Translations under genes and position numbers: made by a program
Notes under the pieces: generated by a model
What the model was told of the DNA's origin: nothing
The model's database searches: none
Seen by the model: only the letters and a program-made list of their open reading frames with translations
Assembly: GCF_032191835.1 (NCBI RefSeq)
Contig: NC_083241.1
Span: 372,001 to 436,000 of the forward strand
DNA: 64,000 nt
Reading direction: 5' to 3'
Origin: Heteronotia binoei
Taxonomy: Eukaryota
Part shown: piece by piece, positions 17,797 to 53,100 of the stretch
Layout: every line of letters begins with the position of its first letter
How positions within the stretch are numbered: position 1 is the stretch's first letter

Positions 17797-18189
17797 AGTA
17801 GGCCTGGCTGGATGTCCATGACCACAGTCGTCCTCCCCTCTGTCTTCCTCCACCACCACTGGTGCCCCTGGGGGGAGAGGGAGGAAGAGCGCCCTTCACC
17901 AGCATCACTCTGCCAGGACAAGGAAACCCCTCGGTTCTCCCCTTGGGTCCGGGGCTCCTCCTGCCACTGTGTTTTCTCTGCTCTCCCTGCTCCCCTTTAA
18001 CTTCTGCTGCCCACTCCGGGAGCAGCAGCCACGTCCTTCCCCGGTGCCCTCTGCCAGCTCCTCCCGGCTGGGAGCAGCAACACTGGTGCCCTTGGCACAG
18101 GAGGGTGGGGCTGCTGAGACCCCTCCCTGGGCACTCCCCCCCCCCCCCCGCGGGAGGTGCTGCAGGCAGCAAGAGTCTCTGGCCCCAGG

Positions 18190-21100
18190 CTATGCAGCTA
18201 CGCCAACCGGGTGAAGCACACATCGCCGCTGCCGCCGCCTCCGTATAATGCGCTGCCTGGGGTGGCGGGGCTTGCGAAGAGAGTCTGCTAGGCAGAGAGG
18301 AGCCAGCAGCAGCCAGAGGTAGAGCAGAACGCAGGCCCAGCCAGAGGCCACCTTGACCCAGAAGGTGGACCAGCTGCCGTGGGTGAAGGCCGTCTCCAGC
18401 TCCACACTCTCGTAGCTGCGGGGAGAGCGAGAGGCTGGTCAGAGGCCCCAGAGAGCCCCCTGCGGGTGGAGGGGCAGCCAGGAACCCTGCCTACCTGAAC
18501 CAGTTGGTGAGGGTCATCATGACGTACAAGGAGGCCAAGAAGAACACAAAGTGGAAGGCTGAGTAGCTGTAGACCACCCGGTCAGCCTCGTCAGAAGGCC
18601 CTGGGCCAGGGACAAAAACCCCTTCTCCTCCTCAGAACACACGCTCAGCTGGCCCCCTGCCTCTCCTGGGGCACGAAGGGAGCCAGCCAGGAGAAGCTGG
18701 GAAGCTCCTCCCACTCAGCCTGCGCCTGCGCCCCCTCCGCACTCACCTGCCCGCTCCTCCTCTTCCCTTCGGGCTGGGCAACAGAAGCAGCAGGAGGCCT
18801 CCTGCAAGGGGAAGAGTTCCACTCAGAGCCACAGGAGGGGGGCAGGGGCAGGACTCCAGCTCACAGTGGGAAAAGGAGGAACCCCCCTGCCTCCCCCCCC
18901 CCACAATGGTACAGATTGGTCTGGCAGCGAAGAAAGCAGGGCGCACACAGCTTACCTGGCACACACGTGGACCAAACCATTCCTGCAAGGGGCAATGGGC
19001 GCAGGCTTTGGCCCACGTTTGCAAGTGTCATGCAGGAGTGAGCACATGGCCTGTGGGCAGAACAGACCAAGGACCCACCAAGAGCAGCAGGCAGCCCCAC
19101 CCACCTTGACTTCCAAGCTGTAGACCTTGACCATCCACAGAGGCCCAAAGAGCTCCGCCAGGAGAGAGGCTTCGTTGCTGCAGTCAGAGGAAAAGGGTGA
19201 GGAGGAAGGGAGCCACCCCTGGGGCTTGGGGCCAGGCCTCCTCTCGACCCGCCGGCCCTGGACAGCATCCCAGCAGAGCAGCTGGGACAGACCCCCCTCA
19301 GGTGGCTCAGCTCAGCAGTGGGGAAAGGAGGCTGGGGTCAGTTTAGCAAGGAGAGTTGCTCCAGGGGGAAACTGTCATGAGGGGAGGAAGGCTTCCCCCG
19401 CTCCATCCCCCTCTCTCAAGCTTCCTTCTTCCCCACTCCAGGAGACAGAGGGCAGCACCCACCAGGCCAAGAGGACGCAGGCATACATGACTCCTGCTCC
19501 CAAGGCGGCCACAGCCGTGTTCTCCCTCTGCATCCCGTTCCCATCCCTGCCGATGCTGGGGAAGCAAATGGTGAGGTTTTGCCCCTGGTACTGCACTGTG
19601 GGTGAGAAACGAGACAGGCGGTGAGCAAGGCTGAGGATCCGGCCCTTCAGAGCTCTCTGGGAGGCAGCGGCTGTGTGCTTCTCCCTGTTGGCGTAGCTGC
19701 ATAGCCTGGCGCCAGAGACTCTCCTGCAGGGAGTGCCAAGGGAGGGGTCTCAGCAGCCCCGCCCCCCTGTGCCAAGGGCACCAGTGCTGCCGCTCCCAGC
19801 CAGGAGGAGCCAGCAGAGGGCGCCAGGGAGGGACGCGGCTGCTGCTCCCGGAGTGGCAAAGGGAGGTGAGAGAGACTCGGACCTTTCTCCGGAGGCCGGC
19901 TGGAGAGGGCGGAGAAGGTCAGGTACATGATGTAGCAGCAGATGATGGAGGCCTGCAGGGGCCCCGAACTAGCTGGTCCTGGGGGCAGAGGGGGAAAGAG
20001 TCAAGCCCCCCCAGCAGCCACAGCATCTGGACAGAACTCACAAGGGCCCTCCTGCTGGAGGTGGACATGGCAAGAAGACGGGGCCTTTGAAGCCACAACC
20101 CCTGAGATTCAACCCCCGCTGCCCAGTTCCACTCCAAGGGTCCAGCCCGCCAGCTCCCTAAAGAGACTTATGCTCATGCAAAGCAAGGGAATGCTGGGTG
20201 TTCTCCCCACCCCCCTTTCGACACATCACAGCGCTGCTGAACTCACTTGTTACGAGGGACATAAATGGGGTTTTGTGGGGCTGGGCCACGTGTGTCAGAA
20301 AATCTCATGCCAGCTGGCAAATATGTGAACTTCATAAAGAATACAAACACAGTTATATATACAAATGCTTAAAACTCTTGTTTAAAATGAAAAGGTGGGG
20401 GAATAGTGGGATTTGGCTAAGCAATTTTTAAAGCAAAGCAGCAAGAAAAAGCACAAGGATCACAGCAGAAACTAAAAATATATACTAAAAATATAACATG
20501 CTCTGAGGCTAGGAAAACATGAAATGGCTGGGCACTGCAAGCTTCTCCCCTCCCCCCATCCCCTGGTCTACCCAGATTGGCAATGGCTCTCCAGTGTAAT
20601 ATCCCCCTTTGGCTGTGGGTTCCCAGGTGAGAGTCCTCACTAGGCACCAGTTCTCAGATGCATTCAGCAGAGACAAGTTGGCTCAAAGCATCAGGCCTTT
20701 GTTTGCAAGGAGACAACTTCAGGAAGCAACAGCTTCCACTGGCCATACAAACACTGGAAAGTGAAACTACTTGAGCTCCACTACATTGAAATACTTTGCT
20801 GCTGAGATAAAGTTGCAATGAATATGTGGAATGGATTTTCCATTAAGGTTTCTGGGACCAGAGTGCTCTATCTGGGTACAAAGACTTTAGTGGAAAATCC
20901 ATTCTGTATTTGGCTGCAGCAGGCAAAAGGAGCTGGGAATTTCAGCAGCCTCCTCAGAGCTTCAAAAGGTGAGGACAGAAGGGGGTGGGGGCGGAGGAAA
21001 AAGCCACAGGCCCGACTGAAGCCCTGGGTGGGCTGGCTGCGGCCCGCAAGCCCTACGTTTGACACCCTTGCATGACATTTACATGCATATTTCCCCCTTG

Positions 21101-41125: not shown

Positions 41126-44100
41126 ATGGATCTGAGGCCACCTTTGCTTGCTCTTGCTGTGGACTTTTGTGCTGGCTCTGGAACTCCTGGTCGGGGGCGT
41201 GGTGGGGCCAGCACCTCTACACCAACACCTGGGCTGTACGGGTCCCTGCCGGGCCAAAGGAAGTGGAAAGGCTGGCCCGCAAGCATGGCTTTGTGAACTT
41301 CGGCCCGGTGAGTCCCGCTTCTTGGGGACGCGAGTAGCGCCAGGGCTGGGTGTGCAGTGAAGGAGGCTGGATGGGTGGGGGGAGTTCTTGCTGGGCGTAA
41401 AGGACCTCCTTGGCCAAGAGTGGACCGTGGCCACGTGTGACTGACAGGGGCGGTTGCTGCAGGTAGAGAATTCTTCAAGCCCTCTGAGGAGAGGCTGAAG
41501 GACCGGGCAGGGTTCAGTCTGGAGAAGATGAGGCTGGGCTGGGGGGGCCTGAAGGAAGGGAGCCGCTCCTGTCAGCAGCAGAGGGTGGGACTCGCAAGAA
41601 TGGATTTAGATGGACTGGCACAAAGGGCCCGGCTGAACCCATTGTTTTCACTCTAAGAGTAGTTCAGCAGCTGCCTCGCAGATGTGGCACTGTGATGCCT
41701 TTTTGGCACTCCAATCAGGAAACATCATTGGGAGATGCAGGGGGACTCACCTGGGCTTCAGTGCCCGCAATGGGCAGGGCTGCGTCAGGATGATGCCAGT
41801 GGGGATGGGAAAGAGGCAAGGCAGGGCCTGCTTTTTCTCCAGACACTGTCTGTGTTTGGTTCATTATCGGGGGGGGGGGGGCGGAGAGAGCGGGGGTGGA
41901 TGTGCTTGAGCTGGCACGCAGACCTGACTGGAGATAGGGAGGCAAGAGGGGTCAGATAACTTCCCCCCATTTTACTAACGGAAAAATCGACATTTTGGGG
42001 AGCACTGGAGAAAAAACTCCACAACATATTTTCTTTTAGAAACATTTTTTGACAAATCACTCGCTATGCACAGGATGCCTTGCGTAAAACATTCAGTCCT
42101 CAGTATTAGGAGGTGATTATCGCTACAGCATATTTATTGCTCAGATGTGACTAATTTTTCACAATTCATATGCATATGATGGTAAAACATCATTGAATTT
42201 CAGTGTTGTCAGTCTTACAGAGTTGGCACTCGAATAAGCTGCATGCTGGTTGTTCCTGCATGAGGTGGTTTCTGGGCAGATAAGACCTGCCATCCCTACA
42301 AAATTCCCTGGGTTTTGAGTTTAAGCTTTTGTTTTTTCCTACCTCTCAAATGATAAAAAGTAATACTTTCCTGCTAATGTAGTGGAAAGTCCAGCAGTTT
42401 GCAACCTCTTCTTCCTTTAGTTGTGGGCATGCTCAGAATGTTGGTTGTAGAAATCAAAGTCATTTTCATAATTCTGCCAAAGAGCACAATTATCTATGCT
42501 AACAAAGTTATAAATGACGCTTTTTATGGTGAGAAAGAAAAAAAGTTTAGGCTCGATAACTAAGTATTGCCTATGTTTGTGTTTCCCCAAATGCCCCCTT
42601 TTGCCCAGTAAGAAGGGGGCAGAGTGGTTGTTCACTCAGCAGAATGTGCCCCCCCCCCCCCCGCTGATGTGGCAGCCCCAGGCGGGAAGCAGCTTTGTCT
42701 GTTTGCCTTGCCAGTTTGCTCCCCCCCCTCCTCCCCCCTTCTCAGGTGTCTTCCGGGGCAAAGACCAGCCTTCTTTCTGGAGCGGCCTGCGCTCAAAGGC
42801 CTAGCTCGTGTTTCCCCTGCAGGGCTGGTATCAGCCTCCTGGTCACCTGACCCTCCATTCGGTCTGCTTGGGTCGGGTGCTGGACGGGGAGGTCGTGGGG
42901 GAGTGGTGGGCAGGGATGTAGGCTTGCCAACTCCTGGTGGGGAATTCCTGGAGTTTAGAGAAGGGACCTTGGGATTCTGGCAGTTGGGGAGGGCCCTTGG
43001 TGGGGCATAGAGCCGAAAAGCTCCCCTCCCCACTAAAAAGGCCATGTGTTTTATTGGCCAGCTGGCAGGCAGCCTCGGGCTGGGGTGCCTTGAGAAGCAT
43101 CAGGAACGTGAGAGACACTCAGAAGAGGTTACAAAGACAAGAAATAACTGAGTGCAAGGTCAGTGATCCAATTAAATGACATCAAGCAAACCACTTTTGA
43201 ATTTACAAAAGACAACCTCGTTTCCTGTTAATTCAAAGCAACATGGGCAAACCACGGGCTAATGGTGGACCAGGAAAACACCTCAGTTACAAGTCCAAGT
43301 TTCTACAAAGTCTTTCCATGTCATGGCAATTCTTCTGTAGAATTGTGATTGCAGTCATAAATTTCAAACTGGTCTGAAAACCAATCAGTGTAGCTTCATG
43401 TAGTTTAAACCAGAAGTTAAGAATGTCATTTCAAAGTCCAAAACTTGCAAAGGTTTCATCCAGTGGGCTGGCCAGCCCCAATCACACCCTCGTCGCACTG
43501 GAAGCTTTTTCAAAGGATGGCATCTTCAAGTTCAAAACGTTCTGTTTTCTGCAACACGGATAAGAATTGATCCAGGACTAACGTCCCCATTCAAGGAGAT
43601 TTTGCAGTCAATGAGCGCCGCCCCTCTGGTCACTTAGCGAGGGGGGGGGGAATGTGTACCAATGTCGCCTCCCCTTCTGCCCCTCCCTCCCTCGGCTCAG
43701 AGGGGAGAGGCGGGGCCCTGCTTTCTCCTTCTGCTCTGGAGGGGCAGAGTGGGGGAAGGGACCAGATTTGGCCTGCTGTGGCCACGGCCTGGCTCTCTTG
43801 CCTGTTGCCCCAGCAGTCCAGAGCCTGCCCAGGTGCCCCCTCCCATTTCTGCCTCATTGCCTCAGGAGCTGCCTGCCCCACCCCCCGCCGCTTCCCCCTA
43901 CCCCACAGCCAGATCGGAAGCCCCCCAGGGAAGAGGTGGTGGTGAGTGAAGCGTGGCCTGCCTTGACCTGAGCTCCTGGGGTGGCAGCAGCTGCCAGCTT
44001 GTGGGGAGAGGCTTTGTCTCCCCCGCCCCACTCTGCCGGGGGTGGGCAGAGGTCCTTTGAGCACCTCCACTGCTGCCCTCTCTGGTTCCTGGAAGCAGCA

Positions 44101-47100
44101 GCAGCAGCGGCGGCAAGTGCTTGGGGGGCAGCCACTCTCCTTGTGCGGGCAGGGGGCCCTTTTCTGCTCCCTGGGGTGGGGCTGGGTCAGAGGGGGGCAG
44201 CCTTTGAAGGGAGGGCTGCTGGGCTTTTTCTTCTTAGGAGAAGGCTGAGGCCGGCAGAAAGGGCCCTGGCCCTTCTTCTCCCCGTGTGTATGTGGGGGGG
44301 GGCAGTTCCCTTGCCCCGGCACCCCATGGGCTCTTCCTCCTCCTCGGGGCATGGACTGAGCAGCGGGGTGTATTTTGTGTGAGATCTGGGCTGTGGGGGG
44401 CAGGAGAGAGGATTGCCTTCCTTGCTCTGAAGTTGGGGTGGCTGTTTGTGTCTTCCTTTAGGGCCTCTTGCTTGGAAAGGTCTGGCAAAAGAACAGTGGC
44501 AGCACAATATATGAAATACAAAAATACAAAAATACAAATATTGTGCACAAATACTCTTAACTGGTGTAAATAAAGTTCTATTATAATGAAATGAACAGCC
44601 TACAACAGTGGGCATACATTCATACAGTAATAAATAGAAATAGAAAACAACAGTCTCAAAACAAATTCCAAGGAGGACCCCACACAGTCACAGAGTTTTC
44701 AAATTGAGTACAATGACTCAAAAATAAAGTTCCACAGGAGTCCCTCCGTTGTTTGTTGACTTCTGAAGGACAAATTCTAGCCTTCACGCAAACCCCGGAT
44801 TTGATTGCGTTCCGCTGCTCCTGCAGCTTCTCGTAAGTCAACTGTATGTTTTTGTTTAAAATCACTTGGGTTAGGGTGGTTTTTATCGGTCACTTTTGTT
44901 GTTTACAGTTGACTTACGAGGAAGCTGCAGGAGCAGCGGAACGCAATCAAATCCGGGGTTTGCGTGAAGGCTAGAATTTGTCCTTCAGAAGTCAACAAAC
45001 AACGGAGGGACTCCTGTGGAACTTTATTTTTGAGTCATTGTACTCATTTTGAAACTCTCTGTGACTGTGTGGGGTCCTCCTTGGAATATTGTTTTGAGAC
45101 TGTTGTTTTCTATTTCTATTTATACTGTATGAATGTATGCCCACTGTTGTAGGCTGTTCATTTCATTATAATAGAACTTTATTTACACCAGTTAAGAGTA
45201 TTTGTTGCACAATTTTTGTATTTTTGTATTTTGGAAAGGTCTGGGGGCTGGCAGGGGGGGTGGGAACTGCTGCTCCAGGGCTGGCTGTTTTCTGGGCCCT
45301 TGGAGGCCCTCCTGTGCAGGGGAGGGGGCTGGGGGAAAGATCCCTGGCCCAGCTCACCTTTGGGCTTTTGAAATCTTTCTTTTTTTCTCTTGGTTGTGGC
45401 TGTCCCCATCGTCTCCTCCTCCTCCCCCTCCTGGAGCCTGTTGGCATTGCCTCAGCCAGTTGGTTCAGGGGCAGCCCTGATTCTTTCTGTGTGGGGCGCA
45501 GGAAGGGGGGGCAGGAGGATTTTCAGGAGGCTTCTGGGGAGGCCTTATGGAGAGCCAGTTTGGTGTAGTGGTGAAGTTGGCTTACCTGGGAGAACCGGGT
45601 TTGATCCCCCACTCCTCCACTTGCAGCTGCTGGAATGGCCTTGGGTCAGCCAGAGCTCTCTTATCTGGAGAACCGGGTTTGATTCCCCACTCCTCCACTT
45701 GCAGCTGCTGGAATGGCCTTGGGTCAGCCAGAGCTCTCTTATCTGGGAGAACGGGTTTGATTCCCCACTCCTCCACTTGCACCTGCTGGAATGGCCTTGG
45801 GTCAGCCATAGCTCTCTTATCTGGGAGAACCGGGTTTGATTCCCCACTCCTCCACTTGCACCTGCTGGAATGGCCTTGGGTCAGCCAGAGCTCTCTTATC
45901 TGGGAGAACCGGGTTTGATTCCCCACTCCTCCACTTGCACCTGCTGGAATGGCGTTGGGTCAGCCAGAGCTCTCTTATCTGGGAGAACCGGGTTTGATTC
46001 CCCACTCCTCCACTTGCAGCTGCTGGAATGGCCTTTGGGTCAGCCATAGCTCTCTTATCTGGGAGAACCGGTTTGATTCCCCACTCCTCCACTTGCACCT
46101 GCTGGAATGGCCTTGGGTCAGCCAGAGCTCTCTTATCTGGGAGAACCGGGTTTGATTCCCCACTCCTCCACTTGCACCTGCTGGTAATGGCGTTGGGTCA
46201 GCCAGAGCTCTCTTATCTGGGAGAACCGGGTTGATTCCCCACTCCTCCACTTGCAGCTGCTGGAATGGCCTTGGGTCAGCCAGAGCTCTCTTATCTGGGA
46301 GAACCGGGTTTGATTCCCCACTCCTCCACTTGCACCTGCTGGAATGGCCTTGGGTCAGCCATAGCTCTCTTATCTGGGAGAACCGGGTTTGATTCCCCAC
46401 TCCTCCACTTGCACCTGCTGAATGGCGTTGGGTCAGCCAGAGCTCTCTTATCTGGGAGAACCGGGTTTGATTCCCCACTCCTCCACTTGCAGCTGCTGGA
46501 ATGGCCTTGGGTCAGCATAGCTCTCTTATCTGGGAGAACCGGGTTTGATTCCCCACTCCTCCACTTGCACCTGCTGGAATGGCCTTGGGTCAGCCAGAGC
46601 TCTCTTATCTGGAGAACCGGGTTTGATTCCCCACTCCTCCACTTGCACCTGCTGGAATGGCGTTGGGTCAGCCAGAGCTCTCTTATCTGGGAGAACCGGG
46701 TTTGATTCCCCACTCCTCCACTTGCAGCTGCTGGAATGGCCTTGGGTCAGCCAGAGCTCTCTTATCTGGGAGAACGGGTTTGATTCCCCACTCCTCCACT
46801 TGCACCTGCTGGAATGGCCTTGGGTCAGCCAGAGCTCTCTTATCTGGGAGAACCGGGTTTGATTCCCCACTCTCCACTTGCACCTGCTGGAATGGCGTTG
46901 GGTCAGCCAGAGCTCTCTTATCTGGGAGAACCGGGTTTGATTCCCCACTCCTCCACTTGCAGCTGCTGGAATGGCCTTGGTCAGCCAGAGCTCTCTTATC
47001 TGGGAGAACCGGGTTTGATTCCCCACTCTTCACTTGCAGCTGCTGGAATGGCCTTGGGTCAGCCAGAGCTCTCTATCTGGGAGAACCGGGTTTGATTCCC

Positions 47101-50100
47101 ACTCCTCCAATTGCAGCTGCTGGAATGGCCTTGGGTCAGCCAGAGCTCTCTTATCTGGGAGAACCGGGTTTGATTCCCCACTCCTCCACTTGCAGCTGCT
47201 GGAATGGCCTTGGGGTCAGCCAGAGCTCTCTTATCTGGGAGAACCGGGTTTGATTCCCCACTCCTCCAATTGCAGCTGCTGGAATGGCCTTGGGTCAGCC
47301 AGAGCTCTCTTATCTGGGAGAACCGGGTTTGATTCCCCACTCCTCACTTGCAGCTGCTGGAATGGCTTGGGTCAGCAGAGCTCTCTTATCTGGGAGAACG
47401 GGTTTGATTCCCCACTCCTCCACTTGCACCTGCTGGAATGGCCTTGGGTCAGCCAGAGCTCTCTTATCTGGGAGAACCGGGTTTGATTCCCCACTCTCCA
47501 CTTGCACCTGCTGGAATGGCGTTGGGTCAGCCAGAGCTCTCTTATCTGGGAGAACCGGGTTTGATTCCCCACTCCTCCACTTGCAGCTGCTGGAATGGCC
47601 TTGGGTCAGCCAGAGCTCTCTTATCTGGAGAACCGGGTTTGATTCCCACTCCTCCACTTGCAGCTGCTGGAATGGCCTTGGGTCAGCCAGAGCTCTCTTA
47701 TCTGGGAGAACCGGGTTTGATTCCCCACTCCTCCACTTGCACCTGCTGGAATGGCGTTGGGTCAGCAGAGCTCTCTTATCTGGGAGAACCGGGTTTGATT
47801 CCCCACTCCTCCACTTGCAGCTGCTGGAATGGCCTTGGGTCAGCCAGAGCTCTCTTATCTGGGAGAACCGGGTTTGATTCCCCACTCCTCCACTTGCACC
47901 TGCTGGAATGGCCTTGGGTCAGCCAGAGCTCTCTTATCTGGGAGAACCGGGTTTGATTCCCCACTCCTCCACTTGCACCTGCTGGAATGGCGTTGGGTCA
48001 GCCAGAGCTCTCTATCTGGGAGAACCGGGTTTGATTCCCCACTCCTCCACTTGCAGCTGCTGGAATGGCCTTGGGTCAGCCAGAGCTCTCTTATCTGGGA
48101 GAACCGGGTTTGATTCCCCACTCCTTCACTTGCAGCTGCTGGAATGGCCTTGGGTCAGCCAGAGCTCTCTTATCTGGGAGAACCGGGTTTGATTCCCCAC
48201 TCCTCCAATTGCAGCTGCTGGAATGGCCTTGGGTCAGCCAGAGCTCTCTTATCTGGGAGAACCGGGTTTGATTCCCCACTCCTCCACTTGCAGCTGCTGG
48301 AATGGCCTTGGGTCAGCCAGAGCTCTCTTATCTGGGAGAACCGGGTTTGATTCCCCACTCCTCCAATTGCAGCTGCTGGAATGGCCTTGGGTCAGCCAGA
48401 GCTCTCTTATCTGGGAGAACCGGGTTTGATTCCCCACTCCTCCACTTGCAGCTGCTGGAATGGCCCTTGGGTCAGCCAGAGCTCTCTTATCTGGGAGAAC
48501 GGGTTTGATTCCCACTCCTCCACTTGCACCTGCTGGAATGGCCTTGGGTCAGCCAGAGCTCTCTTATCTGGGAGAACCGGGTTTGATTCCCCACTCCTCC
48601 ACTTGCACCTGCTGAATGGCGTTGGGTCAGCCAGAGCTCTCTTATCTGGGAGAACCGGGTTTGATTCCCCACTCCTCCACTTGCAGCTGCTGGAATGGCC
48701 TTGGGTCAGCCAGAGCTCTCTTATCTGGGAGAACCGGGTTTGATTCCCCACTCCTCACTTGCAGCTGCTGGAATGGCCTTGGGTCAGCCAGAGCTCTCTT
48801 ATCTGGGAGAACGGGTTTGATTCCCCACTCCTCCAATTGCAGCTTGCTGGAATGGCCTTGGGTCAGCCAGAGCTCTCTTATCTGGGAGAACCGGGTTTGA
48901 TTCCCCACTCCTCCACTTGCAGCTGCTGGAATGGCCTTGGGTCAGCCAGCAGGCTCTTGCAGTGCTTGTCCTTGAAAGGGCAGCTTCTGGGAGAGCCCTC
49001 TCAGGCCCACCCACCTCACAGGGTGTCTGTTGTGGGGGAGGAAGATAAAGGAGATTGTGAGCCGCTGAGACTCTTGAGTGGAGGGTGGGATATAAATCCA
49101 GTGTCGTCGTCTTCCTCTATCTACACTGCAGCAGAGGCCGCCCCAGAAGCGCCAGTGGTGTCTGTTGGAGGAGGCAGGGGCGAGAGTTTGAGGGGGGGCG
49201 GCGGCAGGGTGCTGTGCGGCAGTTGGCCATCTCCCCTCCAACCAGTTCCCTTGGGGGGCCCCTGCTGCTGCTCCTTGGGGGTCTGTCGCTGGGATCTTCT
49301 TTGGAGAGCAGAGGAGCTGTCTCAGTCCCTGCAGCCTGCTGGGAAGGGGGGCTTAGCTGGGCCGGCACACCCCTTCGGCCACCAGAGGCTGTTACTTGGG
49401 GCACAGCCTGGGGGCCAAATCGGGTGCCCCCTGGGAGGGTGGGGGCCACCCCTCCTGGGAGATGGAAATCGCATGGGAGCAGCCGCTGCCCTTCCTGCAT
49501 TCAGCTGAGCAGGGGGACCGGGCCCAGGTCCAGGAAGGCCTTTGGATAGGCCAGGAGGCTTCCAGCCTCAGTCCGCCCATGGAGCAGCCTGCCTCTTGGT
49601 CTCGATGGGCGTCTCTGACTGCGCCCCCTCTCTCTCTCCCTCCAGATCTTGGATGACTATTACCTCCTGTGCCACCGAGCTGTGGCAAAGCGGGTCGCTC
49701 TCCCCCCACAGAGCCTGGCACAGCTCCTTGAGCAGGGAGCCCGAGGTAAGTGGGTCAGCAAGTGGGGGGTGTGTGTGGCTTCTGGTCTTTGTGTCTGGCC
49801 CCAGCCTCTGCCCCNNNNNNNNNNNNNNNNNNNNNNNNNNNNNNNNNNNNNNNNNNNNNNNNNNNNNNNNNNNNNNNNNNNNNNNNNNNNNNNNNNNNNN
49901 NNNNNNNNNNNNNNNNNNNNNNNNNNNNNNNNNNNNNNNNNNNNNNNNNNNNNNNNNNNNNNNNNNNNNNNNNNNNNNNNNNNNNNNNNNNNNNNCTCTC
50001 GGCTCCCAGCCCTGCATGGAGCATCCTGGAGGGGCCACCTGTTGGCTTTGGGTGCCCCTACCCAGTCTTGCTGAGAGGTTCTGTCTGGCTGCTTTTGAAG

Positions 50101-53100
50101 CCACTGGGCAGGGTGGGCACGGCTTTCTTGGGAAGCCACAGGGGGTGGGCCAGCTCCTGTCCAGTGCCTGGCCTCCATCTTCTCTCCTTTTCTCCTGCCC
50201 TAGAGGGGCTCCAGCCCCGGGCTGCTGGAAGAGTCAAAGAGACCGCGGGTGGGGGGGGGGGAGGCTGTCCAGAAGGGCTGGGGTCCGGGCTTGGCTGTGG
50301 CTGCCGTGGAGGCCGGGGGCTCCTGGAGGAGGCTGCTGAGATGCTGCTGGGCCCGGCTCTTGCAGTTGGGGGGTGGGGGGAGTCCCCAGCTGGCCTTCTC
50401 CTCGGCAGTGCCACCCAAGCCCCAGGAAGCTCGTGCCCCCAAAGGCTGGGGGGAGCAGCCCCTCTCCTCCCCTGCCCCCGGAGAGGCTGCCCATCTGCTC
50501 ATAGGCACCTTCTTCCTTCTCCCTCCCCTGCCCATTGTCTCAGGTGCACTGGCTGGAGCAGCAGGTGGCAAGAGGCGGAGAAAAGAGACCTGTTCCTGGA
50601 GCCGACGGACCCCAAGTTCCCGCAGCAGTGGTACCTGGTAAGTGCAGGTGGGCTGCAGGTTCTCCTGGCGATCTGTTCTGGGTGAACCCCAGGAGGGGAC
50701 CGTAATCCCTCGGCCCTGTGCCCTCATCCCCTGAGCTTGTGCCAACTCCTGAGCCAAGCCCTGCCCTCCCTTGGCTTCCTCTGTTGCAGCTGAAGAGGGG
50801 GCCTTGGCCTGTCCCGAGGGGGCCCTCGGGCGGCTCTTCCCTGCTTTGAAGGGGCACTGCTGAGAACGAGGAGGCAGGGGGGAGCAGAAGCACCACAGTG
50901 GCAACTGGGTCAGGCCCTGCATGGCCCTGGGGGGGGGGGGGAGCCAGTGGGGAGGCTCTTTCTGGCTGGGGTGGGCAGACTGCCACCCGCCACCATCTCT
51001 GTCTCTCCTGAGAAGAAGAGCCTTTGCGCTCTTGGGGGCAGGCAGGCCGAGCAAAGGGCAATGGAGCCACGGTCTGAAGGTTGTGGGGGCTGACGGGGCT
51101 CTGCGGCCTTTCCCTGCAGTCTAACGGGAACCAGCGAGACCTGAATGTGCGGGAGGCCTGGCGGCAGGGCTGCACCGGGCGAGGCATCGTGGTCTCCATC
51201 TTAGACGATGGCATTGAGAAGAACCACCCGGATCTAGAAGCCAATTACGTGAGTGGGTGGGGAGGGGGGCAGCACAGGGCTCTGGGGGCACCTCTGCTTT
51301 TCCTGGGAGCTGCATGGCTTGTGGTGGGGAGGAGGGGCTCAGCAGTCCCCCCCCGCCCCCCGTGGAGGCCAGGCCACAGGACTCCAGGAAACTAAAGGCC
51401 CGAGTTGGCCAGAATGGGAGTGTGTGGAGGGGCCCGAGGCTGTGCTTGGTGTCACCAGGCGGGGCTGACAAACCTGCATTAGGGCTTTTCCTGTATAGAG
51501 CTGAATTGGGGGGGGGGTCCCCAATAGCTCTGGGGGAAGGAGGGCGGTGCTTGACCTCCTCTCTCTGCAGGATCCTGCGGCCAGCTTCGATGTCAACGAC
51601 CAGGATTCGGATCCCCAGCCGCGCTACACCCAGATGAATGACAACAGGTGGGTGTGTCTGGGGGGCTGTGGGGGCCTTGCTGATGGAGTGGGGAGGAAGC
51701 AGGTGGGCGGGACCCAGAATGGGTGCTTGGCCTGCATGCCCCTGAGTGCTGCAAGAGACAGAGCTGCTGTTGGCCAGGCCATGGGGGGGGGAGCCAGCTG
51801 TCCAGCTCACGTCCTTGTCGCTCTGTCCTGCTCCAGGCACGGCACGCGGTGTGCGGGTGAAGTGGCCGCTGTGGCCAACAATGGCATCTGTGCCGTGGGA
51901 GTGGCATACAATGCCAGGATTGGAGGTAAGCAGCCTGCAGGGCCTGCCCACTGAGGGGGGGGGTGTCTATTCTGCGTTAGTGACAGGTCTTTGCGGAATG
52001 CGGCCCCGGCTCTGCTTGTCCCATGGAGCAGGGAGAAGTGGGTGGGCCTTTGCCTCTGAGACCTGCCTCTTTCTTGGCTAGGGGTGCGCATGCTGGATGG
52101 GGAGGTGACGGACGCTGTGGAAGCCCAGTCCTTGGGCCTCAACCCCAACCACATCCACATCTACAGCGCCAGCTGGGGCCCCGAGGACGACGGCAAGACG
52201 GTGGATGGCCCCGCCCATCTGGCCGAAGAGGCCTTCTACCGAGGTGTCAGCCAGGTAGGTGGGTGGGCGGCTCTGGGGAGGGGTGCCGTGGGGCTGCCCC
52301 CTCAGCACAGCTGCCTCTTCTTTCTTCCTTCCTTCCTTGCAGGGGCGCAATGGGCTGGGCTCCATCTTTGTGTGGGCCTCGGGGAATGGCGGCCGGGAGC
52401 ACGACAGCTGCAACTGCGACGGCTACACCAACAGCATCTACACCCTCTCCATCAGCAGCACCACCCAGGCGGGGAACGTGCCCTGGTACAGCGAGGCCTG
52501 CTCCTCCACCCTGGCCACCACCTACAGCAGCGGCAGCCAGAACGAGAAGCAGATCGTGAGTCCTCCCGGGCCAGGGAGGGGGCAGGGGCTCCCAGAACAG
52601 CAGCAGCCCTGCCTCACCCCCTCCCCTCCCCGCCTCCCTCCGCAGGTGACCACGGACCTGCGGCAGAAGTGCACGGAATCGCACACGGGCACCTCGGCCT
52701 CCGCCCCCCTGGCCGCTGGCATCATCGCCCTGGCCCTCGAAGCGAAGTAAGAGGGGGAGGGGGGGCCTCGGGGGAGGGGGCTCTTCAGGGCTGGCTGGAG
52801 GCCAGAGGGGTCACCCCCCCCCCCGGTAACCTCCTTCTTTCCCTCCCTCCCTGTAGCAAGAACCTCACCTGGAGGGACATGCAGCACCTGGTGGTGAGGA
52901 CCTCAAAGCCCGCCCACCTCAACACCAATGACTGGGCCCTTAACGGGGTGGGCCGGAAAGGTAAGCTGGCCTGGCTGCCCCCAGGGCCGGGGCTGGGGGG
53001 GTGGGAGGCTGCAGGCCTGACCTCTGCCCATGTCCTTGCAGTCAGCCACTCCTATGGCTACGGCCTCTTGGACGCTGGGGCCATGGTGGCGCTGGCCAAG

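What the first reader, a model, noticed from the sequence alone, without database searches (positions are those of the whole stretch)
44472..45244. 745-bp near-perfect palindrome with a 14-bp target-site duplication in FURIN intron 2
Seen: two ~330-bp AT-rich arms differ by only a few substitutions and indels, surround a 57-nt spacer, and have (GTATTTTT)n-like simple repeats facing outward. There are 28 extra nt on the left, and removing the insert plus one copy of ttggaaaggtctgg rejoins the flanks seamlessly. Knowledge: a 14-bp TSD does not fit Tc1/mariner (TA), piggyBac (TTAA) or hAT (8 bp) and suggests target-primed reverse transcription. Inverted 5'-truncated partner copies are typical of Penelope-like elements. 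I recognise no coding or family motif. Inference: an unclassified, recent fold-back element giving a ~330-bp dsRNA stem in furin pre-mRNA (ADAR or endo-siRNA substrate) and a cruciform-prone site.
Basis: partly seen in the sequence, partly recalled or inferred. Interest (0 to 1): 0.7.

Follow-up and report, generated by a model that had tools for sequence, protein, structure and literature searches.

The report
Two-armed retrotransposon insertion in FURIN intron
A 745-base mirror-image insertion in an intron of a gecko's FURIN gene is real, and is most likely one faulty landing of a copy-and-paste jumping gene in which both cut DNA ends were copied from the element's RNA; this layout is already published for Penelope-like elements, so it is an ordinary find.

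Summary
Window 44486-45230 is a 745-bp, 37% GC insert in 62% GC DNA. It is flanked by an exact 14-bp direct repeat, which no chance match reproduced in 200,000 simulations. It consists of two inverted arms and a 57-nt spacer.

Each arm carries family sequence that the other lacks. The left arm has 36 extra nt at its outer end. The right arm continues into the spacer, as other copies of the family do in public reads. So neither arm was copied from the other. The best reading is one retrotransposition event in which both staggered 3' ends primed cDNA from the element's 3' region, and the two cDNAs joined head to head.

A head-to-head 5'-truncated partner, a one-sided 30-40-nt "tail" and a short target-site duplication (TSD) make up the published insertion signature of Penelope-like elements (PLEs). 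A lizard PLE protein extends both target strands in vitro. However, I found no hammerhead, no reverse transcriptase or endonuclease, and no parent element, so PLE membership is unproven. "Dual priming" by a LINE is the main rival.

Reads did not cover the flanks, so the junctions rest on the assembly alone. The dsRNA, ADAR and cruciform consequences are plausible but untested. Unchecked earlier notes of this scan list many similar fold-back insertions with 12-16-bp TSDs elsewhere in this genome.

The parts
44472..44485 (.). Left copy of the 14-bp target-site duplication TTGGAAAGGTCTGG
   Evidence: Exact direct repeat D7. Neighbouring bases differ, so it is exactly 14 bp. Chance below 5e-6.
44486..44846 (-). 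Left arm (361 nt). It is the element's 3' region, with its sense strand on the - strand and its 3' end pointing outward. It is 5'-truncated at the position equivalent to 44904.
   Evidence: Global alignment with the reverse complement of the right arm: 3 substitutions and 5 one-base indels.
44486..44521 (-). One-sided 'tail': 28 nt plus one extra 8-mer unit (36 nt), present only at the outer end of the left arm.
   Evidence: End gap in the arm alignment. Its length matches the 30-40-bp optional tail of PLE insertions (PMC8557442, PMC3846280, PMC11167929).
44514..44540 (-). Octamer simple repeat, (AAATACAA)3 on the + strand. It sits in the loop of a 9-bp stem, GCACAATAT/ATATTGTGC.
   Evidence: D2 and I11. 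The stem appears in the MFE and centroid folds, but the fold is no better than shuffles (z -0.35).
44842..44846 (.). CTGTA: putative 5-nt microhomology at the head-to-head junction of the two cDNAs.
   Evidence: Two RNA-run contigs of other family copies (X4 records 18 and 19) align from 44937/44935 leftward through the spacer. Both stop at 44842, and their remaining 16 letters do not fit the left arm. This is an inference.
44847..44903 (+). 57-nt 'spacer'. It is the 5' continuation of the right arm in the parent family, not a loop made de novo.
   Evidence: Contigs span the spacer plus the start of the right arm. RNA-contig depth is 184-362 over 44860-44987, against 8-12 over the inner left arm (tables 2 and 8).
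44904..45230 (+). Right arm (327 nt). It is the element's 3' region, with its sense strand on the + strand. It ends inside the octamer repeat and has no tail.
   Evidence: A 2-nt (TT) overlap is possible between the repeat unit and the TSD.
45231..45244 (.). Right copy of the 14-bp target-site duplication.
   Evidence: D7.
41126..41307 (+). Context: first coding exon of FURIN (signal peptide and start of the pro-domain). The insert lies 3165 nt downstream of its splice donor.
   Evidence: Pfam S8_pro-domain, E 7e-7. ATG and donor located.
50544..50637 (+). Context: the next recognisable FURIN exon (VHWLEQQVA...[13 protein letters not shown]). This fixes the host gene on the + strand, so the whole palindrome is in the pre-mRNA.
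   Evidence: Catalytic exons downstream match solved furin structures at E 1e-55.

Best explanation
This is a single retrotransposition event, most likely made by the machinery of a Penelope-like element (PLE).

Proposed steps:
1. The target was nicked on both strands 14 bp apart.
2. Both resulting 3' ends were used as primers for reverse transcription of the 3' region of an unidentified, hammerhead-less retroelement RNA.
3. The + strand end started at the distal start site. It gave the left arm, which carries the 36-nt tail, and stopped after 361 nt.
4. The - strand end started about 36 nt further in, inside the octamer repeat. It gave the right arm plus the 'spacer', 384 nt in all.
5. The two cDNA 3' ends were joined head to head, probably through a 5-nt CTGTA microhomology.
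6. Filling in the 14-nt overhangs produced the TSD.

The palindrome is therefore a by-product of insertion. It is dead on arrival, with no coding capacity, and is not an element that transposes as a fold-back.

Shown: the anatomy, the TSD, the sequence unique to each arm, and the existence of a repeated family.
Inferred: the order of events, the microhomology, and the enzyme.

As a consequence, FURIN pre-mRNA must contain a near-perfect hairpin of about 325 bp. This follows from the gene's strand. No effect of the hairpin was tested.
For: 1. A perfect 14-bp TSD encloses the whole palindrome, so it is one event. The insert is compositionally foreign.
2. Each arm holds sequence the other lacks. 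The left arm has 36 nt at its outer end. On the right, the 57-nt spacer is contiguous with the right arm in other family copies, and those copies diverge from the left arm at 44842 (records 18 and 19 and the depth table). So the arms are two independent copies of a template, not copies of each other.
3. The arms and spacer are hit by many contigs and reads at 85-99% identity in DNA and RNA runs from three other studies, while the unique flanks have zero depth. This shows a dispersed repeat family.
4. The published PLE layout is an inverted 5'-truncated copy adjacent head to head, an optional 30-40-bp tail at one end only, and a short TSD (PMC8557442; PMC3846280).
5. The Anolis Poseidon protein cleaves and extends both target strands in vitro. 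It starts reverse transcription at two adjacent internal sites in a stem-loop, and the tail is the sequence between them (PMC11167929).
6. Here the two outer ends differ by 36 nt and bracket the 3' half of a 9-bp stem.
7. On the outward-facing strand an ATG opens a frame that runs to the element end, 94 nt on the right and 130 nt on the left. In Poseidon_Ac the tail spans roughly nt 85-119 of the ORF.
8. Unchecked earlier notes of this scan list many fold-back insertions with 12-16-bp TSDs in this genome. Several were followed up as two-armed Penelope insertions, and one has a 33-nt one-sided tail.
Against: - No hammerhead ribozyme motif on either strand (Rfam at E<=10; gathering scan of the whole window; regex for the CUGANGA core). 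Canonical vertebrate PLEs carry one in the pLTR, close to the ORF start.
- No RT or GIY-YIG remnant and no protein relatives for the arm ORFs.
- No parent element was found.
- The target is GC-rich, without the ATT cleavage motif reported for Poseidon_Ac.
- The RNA at the start sites would be GU-rich, not AC-rich as in Poseidon_Ac.
- The terminal stem-loop is no more stable than shuffled sequence.
- Whether the 28-nt tail belongs to the family consensus could not be settled from the read tables.
- The ORF open to the element end has roughly a 1-in-5 probability by composition alone.
- The junctions have no read support, because the flanks were not covered.
Confidence: 0.55

Rival explanations
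1. The geometry is the same, but the enzyme is a LINE. This would be 'dual priming' by a stringent-type LINE (CR1- or L2-like) or by a SINE dependent on one. Both nicked target strands primed on the 3' ends of two RNA molecules, or twice on one. One priming event started inside the octamer microsatellite. The other started on a read-through or extended 3' end.
For: - Octamer simple repeats next to a small stem recall the hairpin-plus-octamer 3' end of amniote CR1 (PMC8665684).
- Dual priming was proposed for L1 (PMC2837659).
- Opposite-orientation insertions made by reverse transcription from both DNA ends were seen experimentally for L1 (PMC11702581).
- A 14-bp TSD and an internal microhomology are typical of twin-primed L1 insertions.
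- No hammerhead is present.
Against: - The octamer (GTATTTTT) is not the CR1 motif ATTCTRTG, and in the left arm it is not terminal.
- Classical twin priming uses adjacent, non-overlapping parts of one RNA, but here the arms overlap over about 324 nt.
- No LINE ORF was found in or next to the insert.
Confidence: 0.27
2. Self-priming or a DNA-level inverted duplication. A single 5'-truncated insertion, or its cDNA, snapped back on itself at CTGTA/TACAG and copied itself. Alternatively, a later replication or repair fold-back duplicated one arm.
For: - The 5-nt CTGTA/TACAG complementarity lies exactly at the arm and spacer boundaries.
- PLE inverted junctions have been read as self-priming (PMC3846280).
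- Hairpin-mediated foldbacks are documented for L1 (PMC11702581).
Against: - A snap-back copy can hold only what its template holds. The left arm has 36 nt that the right arm lacks, and the right side has 57 nt that the left lacks.
- Copying back through the right arm would run into inverted target DNA, not into the tail.
- A later DNA-level duplication would not leave an intact 14-bp TSD abutting both outer ends.
Confidence: 0.08
3. A non-autonomous cut-and-paste DNA transposon (a long-TIR MITE or Foldback-type element) that transposes as a palindrome.
For: - Long, near-identical inverted arms with a short spacer and no coding capacity.
- Unchecked earlier notes list other fold-backs of similar size in this genome (732 bp with about 330-bp arms; about 390-bp arms).
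Against: - The termini are unequal by 36 nt, so the inverted repeat is not terminal on the right.
- From general knowledge, a 14-bp TSD fits no cut-and-paste superfamily.
- Contigs from other copies join the spacer to the right arm but not to the left arm.
Confidence: 0.05
4. Assembly or library artefact: a fold-back chimeric long read was built into the contig.
For: - The junctions could not be checked with reads.
- The assembly shows apparent frameshifts in two FURIN coding exons, so it contains indel errors.
Against: - A chimeric fold-back read would invert the flanks too. Here the flanks are unique and collinear and carry a perfect TSD.
- The arms are asymmetric in a biologically meaningful way.
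- The insert sits in mid-contig.
Confidence: 0.03

Closest known systems
Penelope-like element (PLE) insertions with an inverted 5'-truncated partner and a one-sided 'tail' (Evgen'ev & Arkhipova; Craig et al. 2021, PMC8557442; Arkhipova et al. 2013, PMC3846280; Frangieh et al. 2024, PMC11167929)
   Same: - Head-to-head inverted arms with the 3' ends facing outward, all inside one short TSD.
- An optional extension of about 30-40 nt at only one outer end (36 nt here).
- The two ends correspond to two nearby start sites around a stem-loop.
- An ATG about 90-130 nt before the ends, as in Poseidon_Ac.
- A lizard host in which PLEs are reported active.
   Different: - No hammerhead motif, no RT/GIY-YIG and no direct pLTR.
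- A GC-rich target instead of AT-rich ATT sites.
- The start-site region is GU-rich in the RNA and contains an octamer simple repeat.
- No nucleotide similarity to Poseidon_Ac beyond ATGCC, judged by eye on the published consensus.
L1 twin priming (Ostertag & Kazazian 2001) and the proposed 'dual priming' variant (Meyer et al. 2010, PMC2837659)
   Same: - Both target 3' ends prime reverse transcription.
- A TSD of about 12-18 bp is preserved.
- The two cDNAs are joined internally, often with microhomology.
- Dual priming predicts 3' tails at both outer ends, as seen here.
   Different: - Classical twin priming inverts a neighbouring, non-overlapping part of the same RNA, but here the arms duplicate the same 324 nt.
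- There is no poly(A).
- The element is not L1.
Amniote CR1 3' end (hairpin plus octamer microsatellite; PMC8665684)
   Same: An 8-nt repeat unit in 2.5-3 copies near the 3' end, next to a short stem.
   Different: - The motif is GTATTTTT, not ATTCTRTG.
- In the complete (left) end the repeat is followed by 28 more nt.
- No CR1 ORF2 sequence is present.
Foldback / long-TIR MITE DNA transposons
   Same: A palindromic, non-coding insert of about 0.7 kb.
   Different: - Unequal termini.
- A 14-bp TSD.
- Other family copies are not palindromic at this junction.

Membership tests
Penelope-like elements (PLE) | ORF with a PLE-clade reverse transcriptase and a GIY-YIG endonuclease, in the copy or in its parent | tested here: inconclusive
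   The 745 bp contain no domain and no protein relatives. Both arms are 5'-truncated 3' ends, so none is expected. The parent could not be reached with the collections on hand.
Penelope-like elements (PLE) | Inverted 5'-truncated copy adjacent head to head, with the whole unit inside one TSD | tested here: met
   Arms of 361 and 384 nt with their 3' ends outward, inside an exact 14-bp TSD.
Penelope-like elements (PLE) | Optional 30-40-bp 'tail' at one end only, reflecting two adjacent RT start sites | tested here: met
   A 36-nt extension on the left arm only. Whether the tail recurs in other copies could not be settled.
Penelope-like elements (PLE) | Hammerhead ribozyme motif in the pLTR (canonical Penelope/Poseidon, Neptune) | tested here: not met
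   No Rfam hammerhead at E<=10 or at gathering score in the whole window. No CUGANGA or C.GA.GA core on either strand.
Penelope-like elements (PLE) | AT-rich target with an ATT cleavage motif (a property of Poseidon_Ac in vitro, not of all PLEs) | tested here: not met
   The inferred nicks are GGTCTGG^GGGC on the + strand and TTTCCAA^GCAAG on the - strand, in 62% GC DNA.
LINE twin priming (classical) | Inverted and direct segments derive from adjacent, essentially non-overlapping parts of one RNA | tested here: not met
   The arms overlap over about 324 nt.
LINE dual priming (proposed) | Two cDNAs primed from both nicks at the RNA 3' end, 3' tails at both outer ends, TSD kept | tested here: met
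   Both outer ends are the element's 3' region and the TSD is intact. This feature does not separate a LINE from a PLE.
CR1-type LINE 3' end | Stable hairpin followed by a terminal ATTCTRTG-type octamer microsatellite | tested here: inconclusive
   An octamer repeat is present but has a different motif, and it is internal in the complete end. The stem is 9 bp, and the fold is no better than shuffles.
Cut-and-paste MITE / Foldback element | Equal terminal inverted repeats reaching both ends, and a superfamily-typical TSD (2-11 bp) | tested here: not met
   A 36-nt asymmetry of the termini and a 14-bp TSD. TSD lengths of the superfamilies are from general knowledge.

The most novel reading that the evidence does not exclude
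The arms belong to a hammerhead-less retroelement family that is not a canonical PLE. Two versions are possible. In one, it is a CR1- or L2-like LINE or SINE, and the locus is a clean natural example of the so-far hypothetical 'dual priming', with two full-overlap cDNAs from both nicks. In the other, it is a non-autonomous family mobilised in trans by gecko PLE machinery through a 3' stem-loop with an octamer repeat. That second version would show that the PLE two-start-site 'tail' signature does not need the ORF start or the ribozyme.
Probability: 0.3. Interest if true: 0.45.

Novelty: new member of a known kind. Interest (0 to 1): 0.25.

Why it matters
The direct importance is modest. The locus is a tidy, young example showing from sequence alone that both nicked target strands can prime reverse transcription in one event, because each arm keeps template sequence that the other lacks. 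This agrees with the in-vitro behaviour of a lizard Penelope-like protein.

If the family proves not to be a PLE, the locus would document dual priming outside L1.

For the host, it places a near-perfect hairpin of about 325 bp in the pre-mRNA of an essential protease gene. Such a hairpin is a candidate substrate for ADAR or Dicer and a possible site of replication fragility. No effect was tested, and such intronic insertions appear common in this genome.

For annotation, insertions like this should be recognised as two-armed retro-insertions and not be called fold-back or MITE transposons.

Tried and rejected
- **Other copies in the window:** none (blastn, word size 7). The only other long inverted repeat in the window is unrelated (18.0/19.7 kb).
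- **Rfam:** the only hit is a sub-threshold MIR530 match on both strands. It is an artefact of any long hairpin. There are no hammerheads.
- **Coding potential:** all six frames were read. Word searches of a 79-aa arm ORF and of the 43-aa outward ORF were blank. Because of the length filter, a blank says nothing about long relatives. Pfam gave only sub-threshold compositional hits.
- **Public collections:** one metagenome scan with a 24-mer from the most conserved part of the arm found a single 66% GC contig (L001) sharing only 24-27 nt. This is a chance match.
- **Reads:** the four runs laid did not cover the unique flanks. The fold-back junctions, an empty allele, intron expression and editing could therefore not be tested. 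The A>G and T>C differences listed come from paralogous copies and are not evidence of editing.
- **Tail in the reads:** I tried to infer from bin depths whether the 28-nt tail occurs in other copies. The arithmetic is ambiguous because the octamer repeat lies in the same bin, so I dropped the argument.
- **Comparison with Poseidon_Ac:** this was done by eye only, on the published consensus. I saw no similarity beyond the first five bases of the ORF.
- **Large HMMER search:** not run. The operators flagged it as costly, and a 43-aa, probably non-coding query had a low expected yield.
- **FURIN exons:** searched ORF by ORF by reference.
Full report
**Observation**

An exact 14-mer, TTGGAAAGGTCTGG, lies at 44472-44485 and again at 45231-45244. 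The bases next to each copy differ, so the duplication is exactly 14 bp.

Between the two copies lie 745 bp:
- a left arm, 44486-44846 (361 nt);
- a 57-nt spacer, 44847-44903;
- a right arm, 44904-45230 (327 nt).

The arms align over about 324 positions with 3 substitutions and 5 one-base indels. The left arm has 36 more nt at its outer end, made of 28 nt plus one more 8-mer unit. An octamer repeat, (AAATACAA)n on the + strand and (GTATTTTT)n on the outward-reading strand, sits near both outer ends.

The insert is 37% GC in 62% GC flanks. In 200,000 simulations with the flank composition, no 14-mer abutted both ends within 5 nt. As RNA the region folds to -588 kcal/mol, against -184 for shuffles.

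**Gene context**

FURIN is on the + strand.
- A first coding exon (ATG at 41126, donor after 41307) matches Pfam S8_pro-domain.
- The next recognisable exon is 50544-50637.
- Downstream exons match solved furin structures at E 1e-55.

The insert therefore lies 3165 nt into the intron after the first coding exon, and the whole palindrome is part of the pre-mRNA. The exon expected between these two was not found. It may lie under the N run at 49815-49995, which I left as it is. I searched the exons one by one by reference and built no joined model.

Both coding exons I read switch reading frame internally. In an essential gene this suggests indel errors in the assembly. The five one-base indels between the arms may therefore be assembly noise and not divergence.

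**What the reads add and what they do not**

According to earlier notes of this scan, the genome is a gecko, Bynoe's gecko. The four public runs I laid on the region have zero depth on the unique flanks. The junctions, an empty allele, expression of this intron and editing could therefore not be tested.

The arms and the spacer are nevertheless covered by many contigs and reads at 85-99% identity. These come from DNA and RNA runs of three studies other than the probable source sample, whose contigs gave no depth on the arms. The arm therefore belongs to a dispersed repeat family.

Two RNA-run contigs (records 18 and 19) run from inside the right arm through the whole spacer. They stop matching at 44842, and their 16 remaining letters do not fit the left arm. 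Contig depth is 184-362 over 44860-44987 but only 8-12 over the inner left arm. So in the family the 'spacer' is simply the sequence upstream of the right arm.

**Inference on origin**

Each arm holds family sequence that the other lacks: 36 nt at the outer end on the left, and 57 nt at the inner end on the right. Neither arm can therefore be a copy of the other.

This excludes a simple snap-back or a later inverted duplication. Such a duplication would also be unlikely to leave an intact TSD against both outer ends.

One TSD around the whole structure means one event. Both outer ends are the same end of the element, and both abut a target 3' end. The simplest reading is that both 3' ends of a 14-bp staggered break primed reverse transcription of the element's 3' region:
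- the + strand end produced 361 nt, starting at the distal site;
- the - strand end produced 384 nt, starting 36 nt further in, inside the octamer repeat, with at most a 2-nt TT overlap with the target.

The two cDNA ends were then joined. The records that stop at 44842 suggest that the parent reads CTGTA just upstream of the spacer. This would give a 5-nt microhomology with the end of the left-arm cDNA. That point is an inference from two probably non-independent contigs.

**Which machinery**

The layout matches what is published for Penelope-like elements.
- A 31-bp optional tail on one of the inverted pLTRs and TSDs of 8-10 bp are described in rotifers (PMC3846280).
- The Anolis Poseidon protein cleaves and extends both target strands in vitro, unlike R2 and L1. 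It starts reverse transcription at two adjacent internal sites in a stem-loop, and the tail is the stretch between them (PMC11167929).

Here the two ends differ by 36 nt and bracket the 3' half of a 9-bp stem, GCACAAUAU/AUAUUGUGC, whose loop is the octamer repeat. An ATG on the outward strand opens a frame that runs to the element end, 94 nt before the tail-less end and 130 nt before the tailed end. In Poseidon_Ac the tail spans about nt 85-119 of the ORF.

Earlier notes of this scan, which I could not check, list many fold-back insertions with 12-16-bp TSDs in this genome. Several were followed up as two-armed Penelope insertions. One has arms of about 390 bp, a 14-bp TSD and a 33-nt one-sided tail.

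**Against PLE membership**

- There is no hammerhead motif.
- There is no RT or GIY-YIG, and no protein relative.
- The target is GC-rich and lacks the ATT motif.
- The start-site RNA would be GU-rich, not AC-rich.
- The stem-loop folds no better than shuffled sequence.
- The open frame has roughly a 1-in-5 probability by composition.
- By eye, the sequence shares nothing with the published Poseidon_Ac consensus beyond ATGCC.

I therefore describe the locus as working like a PLE two-armed insertion. I put PLE machinery at about 0.55 and do not file the locus as a proven PLE.

**Main rival**

A LINE could give the same geometry through 'dual priming'. This was proposed for L1 (PMC2837659). It is supported experimentally by opposite-orientation L1-mediated insertions made from both DNA ends (PMC11702581).

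The octamer repeat next to a short stem recalls the CR1 3' end (PMC8665684). However, the motif differs, and in the complete end the repeat is not terminal.

Classical twin priming is not met, because the arms overlap fully instead of coming from adjacent parts of one RNA.

A cut-and-paste long-TIR element is unlikely, given the unequal termini, the 14-bp TSD and the non-palindromic family copies.

An assembly chimera is also unlikely. It would invert the flanks too and would not create a TSD.

**Age and consequences**

With three substitutions in about 324 nt and a perfect TSD, the insertion is young. No date is given, because the two templates may have differed and because hairpin-directed correction may have erased differences.

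These are a roughly 325-bp dsRNA stem in FURIN pre-mRNA as an ADAR or Dicer substrate, and cruciform proneness. The A>G and T>C differences in the read tables come from paralogous copies.

**Verdict**

The locus is an ordinary two-armed retro-insertion of a known kind, from an unidentified family without a hammerhead. It is not a new class of fold-back element. The scan has noted the same kind of structure on other DNA of this genome.

Noticed in passing
window 41126-41307 and 50544-50637: Both FURIN coding exons I read change reading frame internally. The first exon goes from MDLRPPLL... in one frame to ...[11 protein letters not shown] in another. The second goes from VHWLEQQVA to [19 protein letters not shown] across the propeptide cleavage-site codons. 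In an essential gene this most likely reflects indel errors of the assembly in GC-rich or homopolymer stretches.
   Followed up: partly
window 49815-49995: An N run lies just upstream of exon 50544-50637. The expected second pro-domain exon of FURIN was not found anywhere in the intron and may lie under this run. I left it as it is.
   Followed up: no
window 45550-45800 (continues to about 49118 according to note s1-328530): A SINE-derived tandem array starts 300 nt downstream of the insert. Summed contig depth there reaches the tens to hundreds of thousands in all four runs, and many contigs skip one or two repeat units of about 80-90 nt. It is therefore an extremely abundant repeat.
   Followed up: no
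window 18011-18138 and 19729-19856: The only other long inverted repeat in the window: 128-nt arms, 91% complementary, 1590 nt apart, GC-rich. Matching ORF fragments lie on opposite strands.
   Followed up: no
window 44860-45051: The inner 190 nt of the family (part of the spacer plus the first part of the arm) has 5-20 times more RNA-contig depth than the rest of the arm. This part may be shared with a more abundant or more highly expressed relative.
   Followed up: no
L001:1244-1270: A 66% GC metagenome contig shares an exact 24-27-mer with the arm and nothing else. It is a chance match and not a relative.
   Followed up: yes
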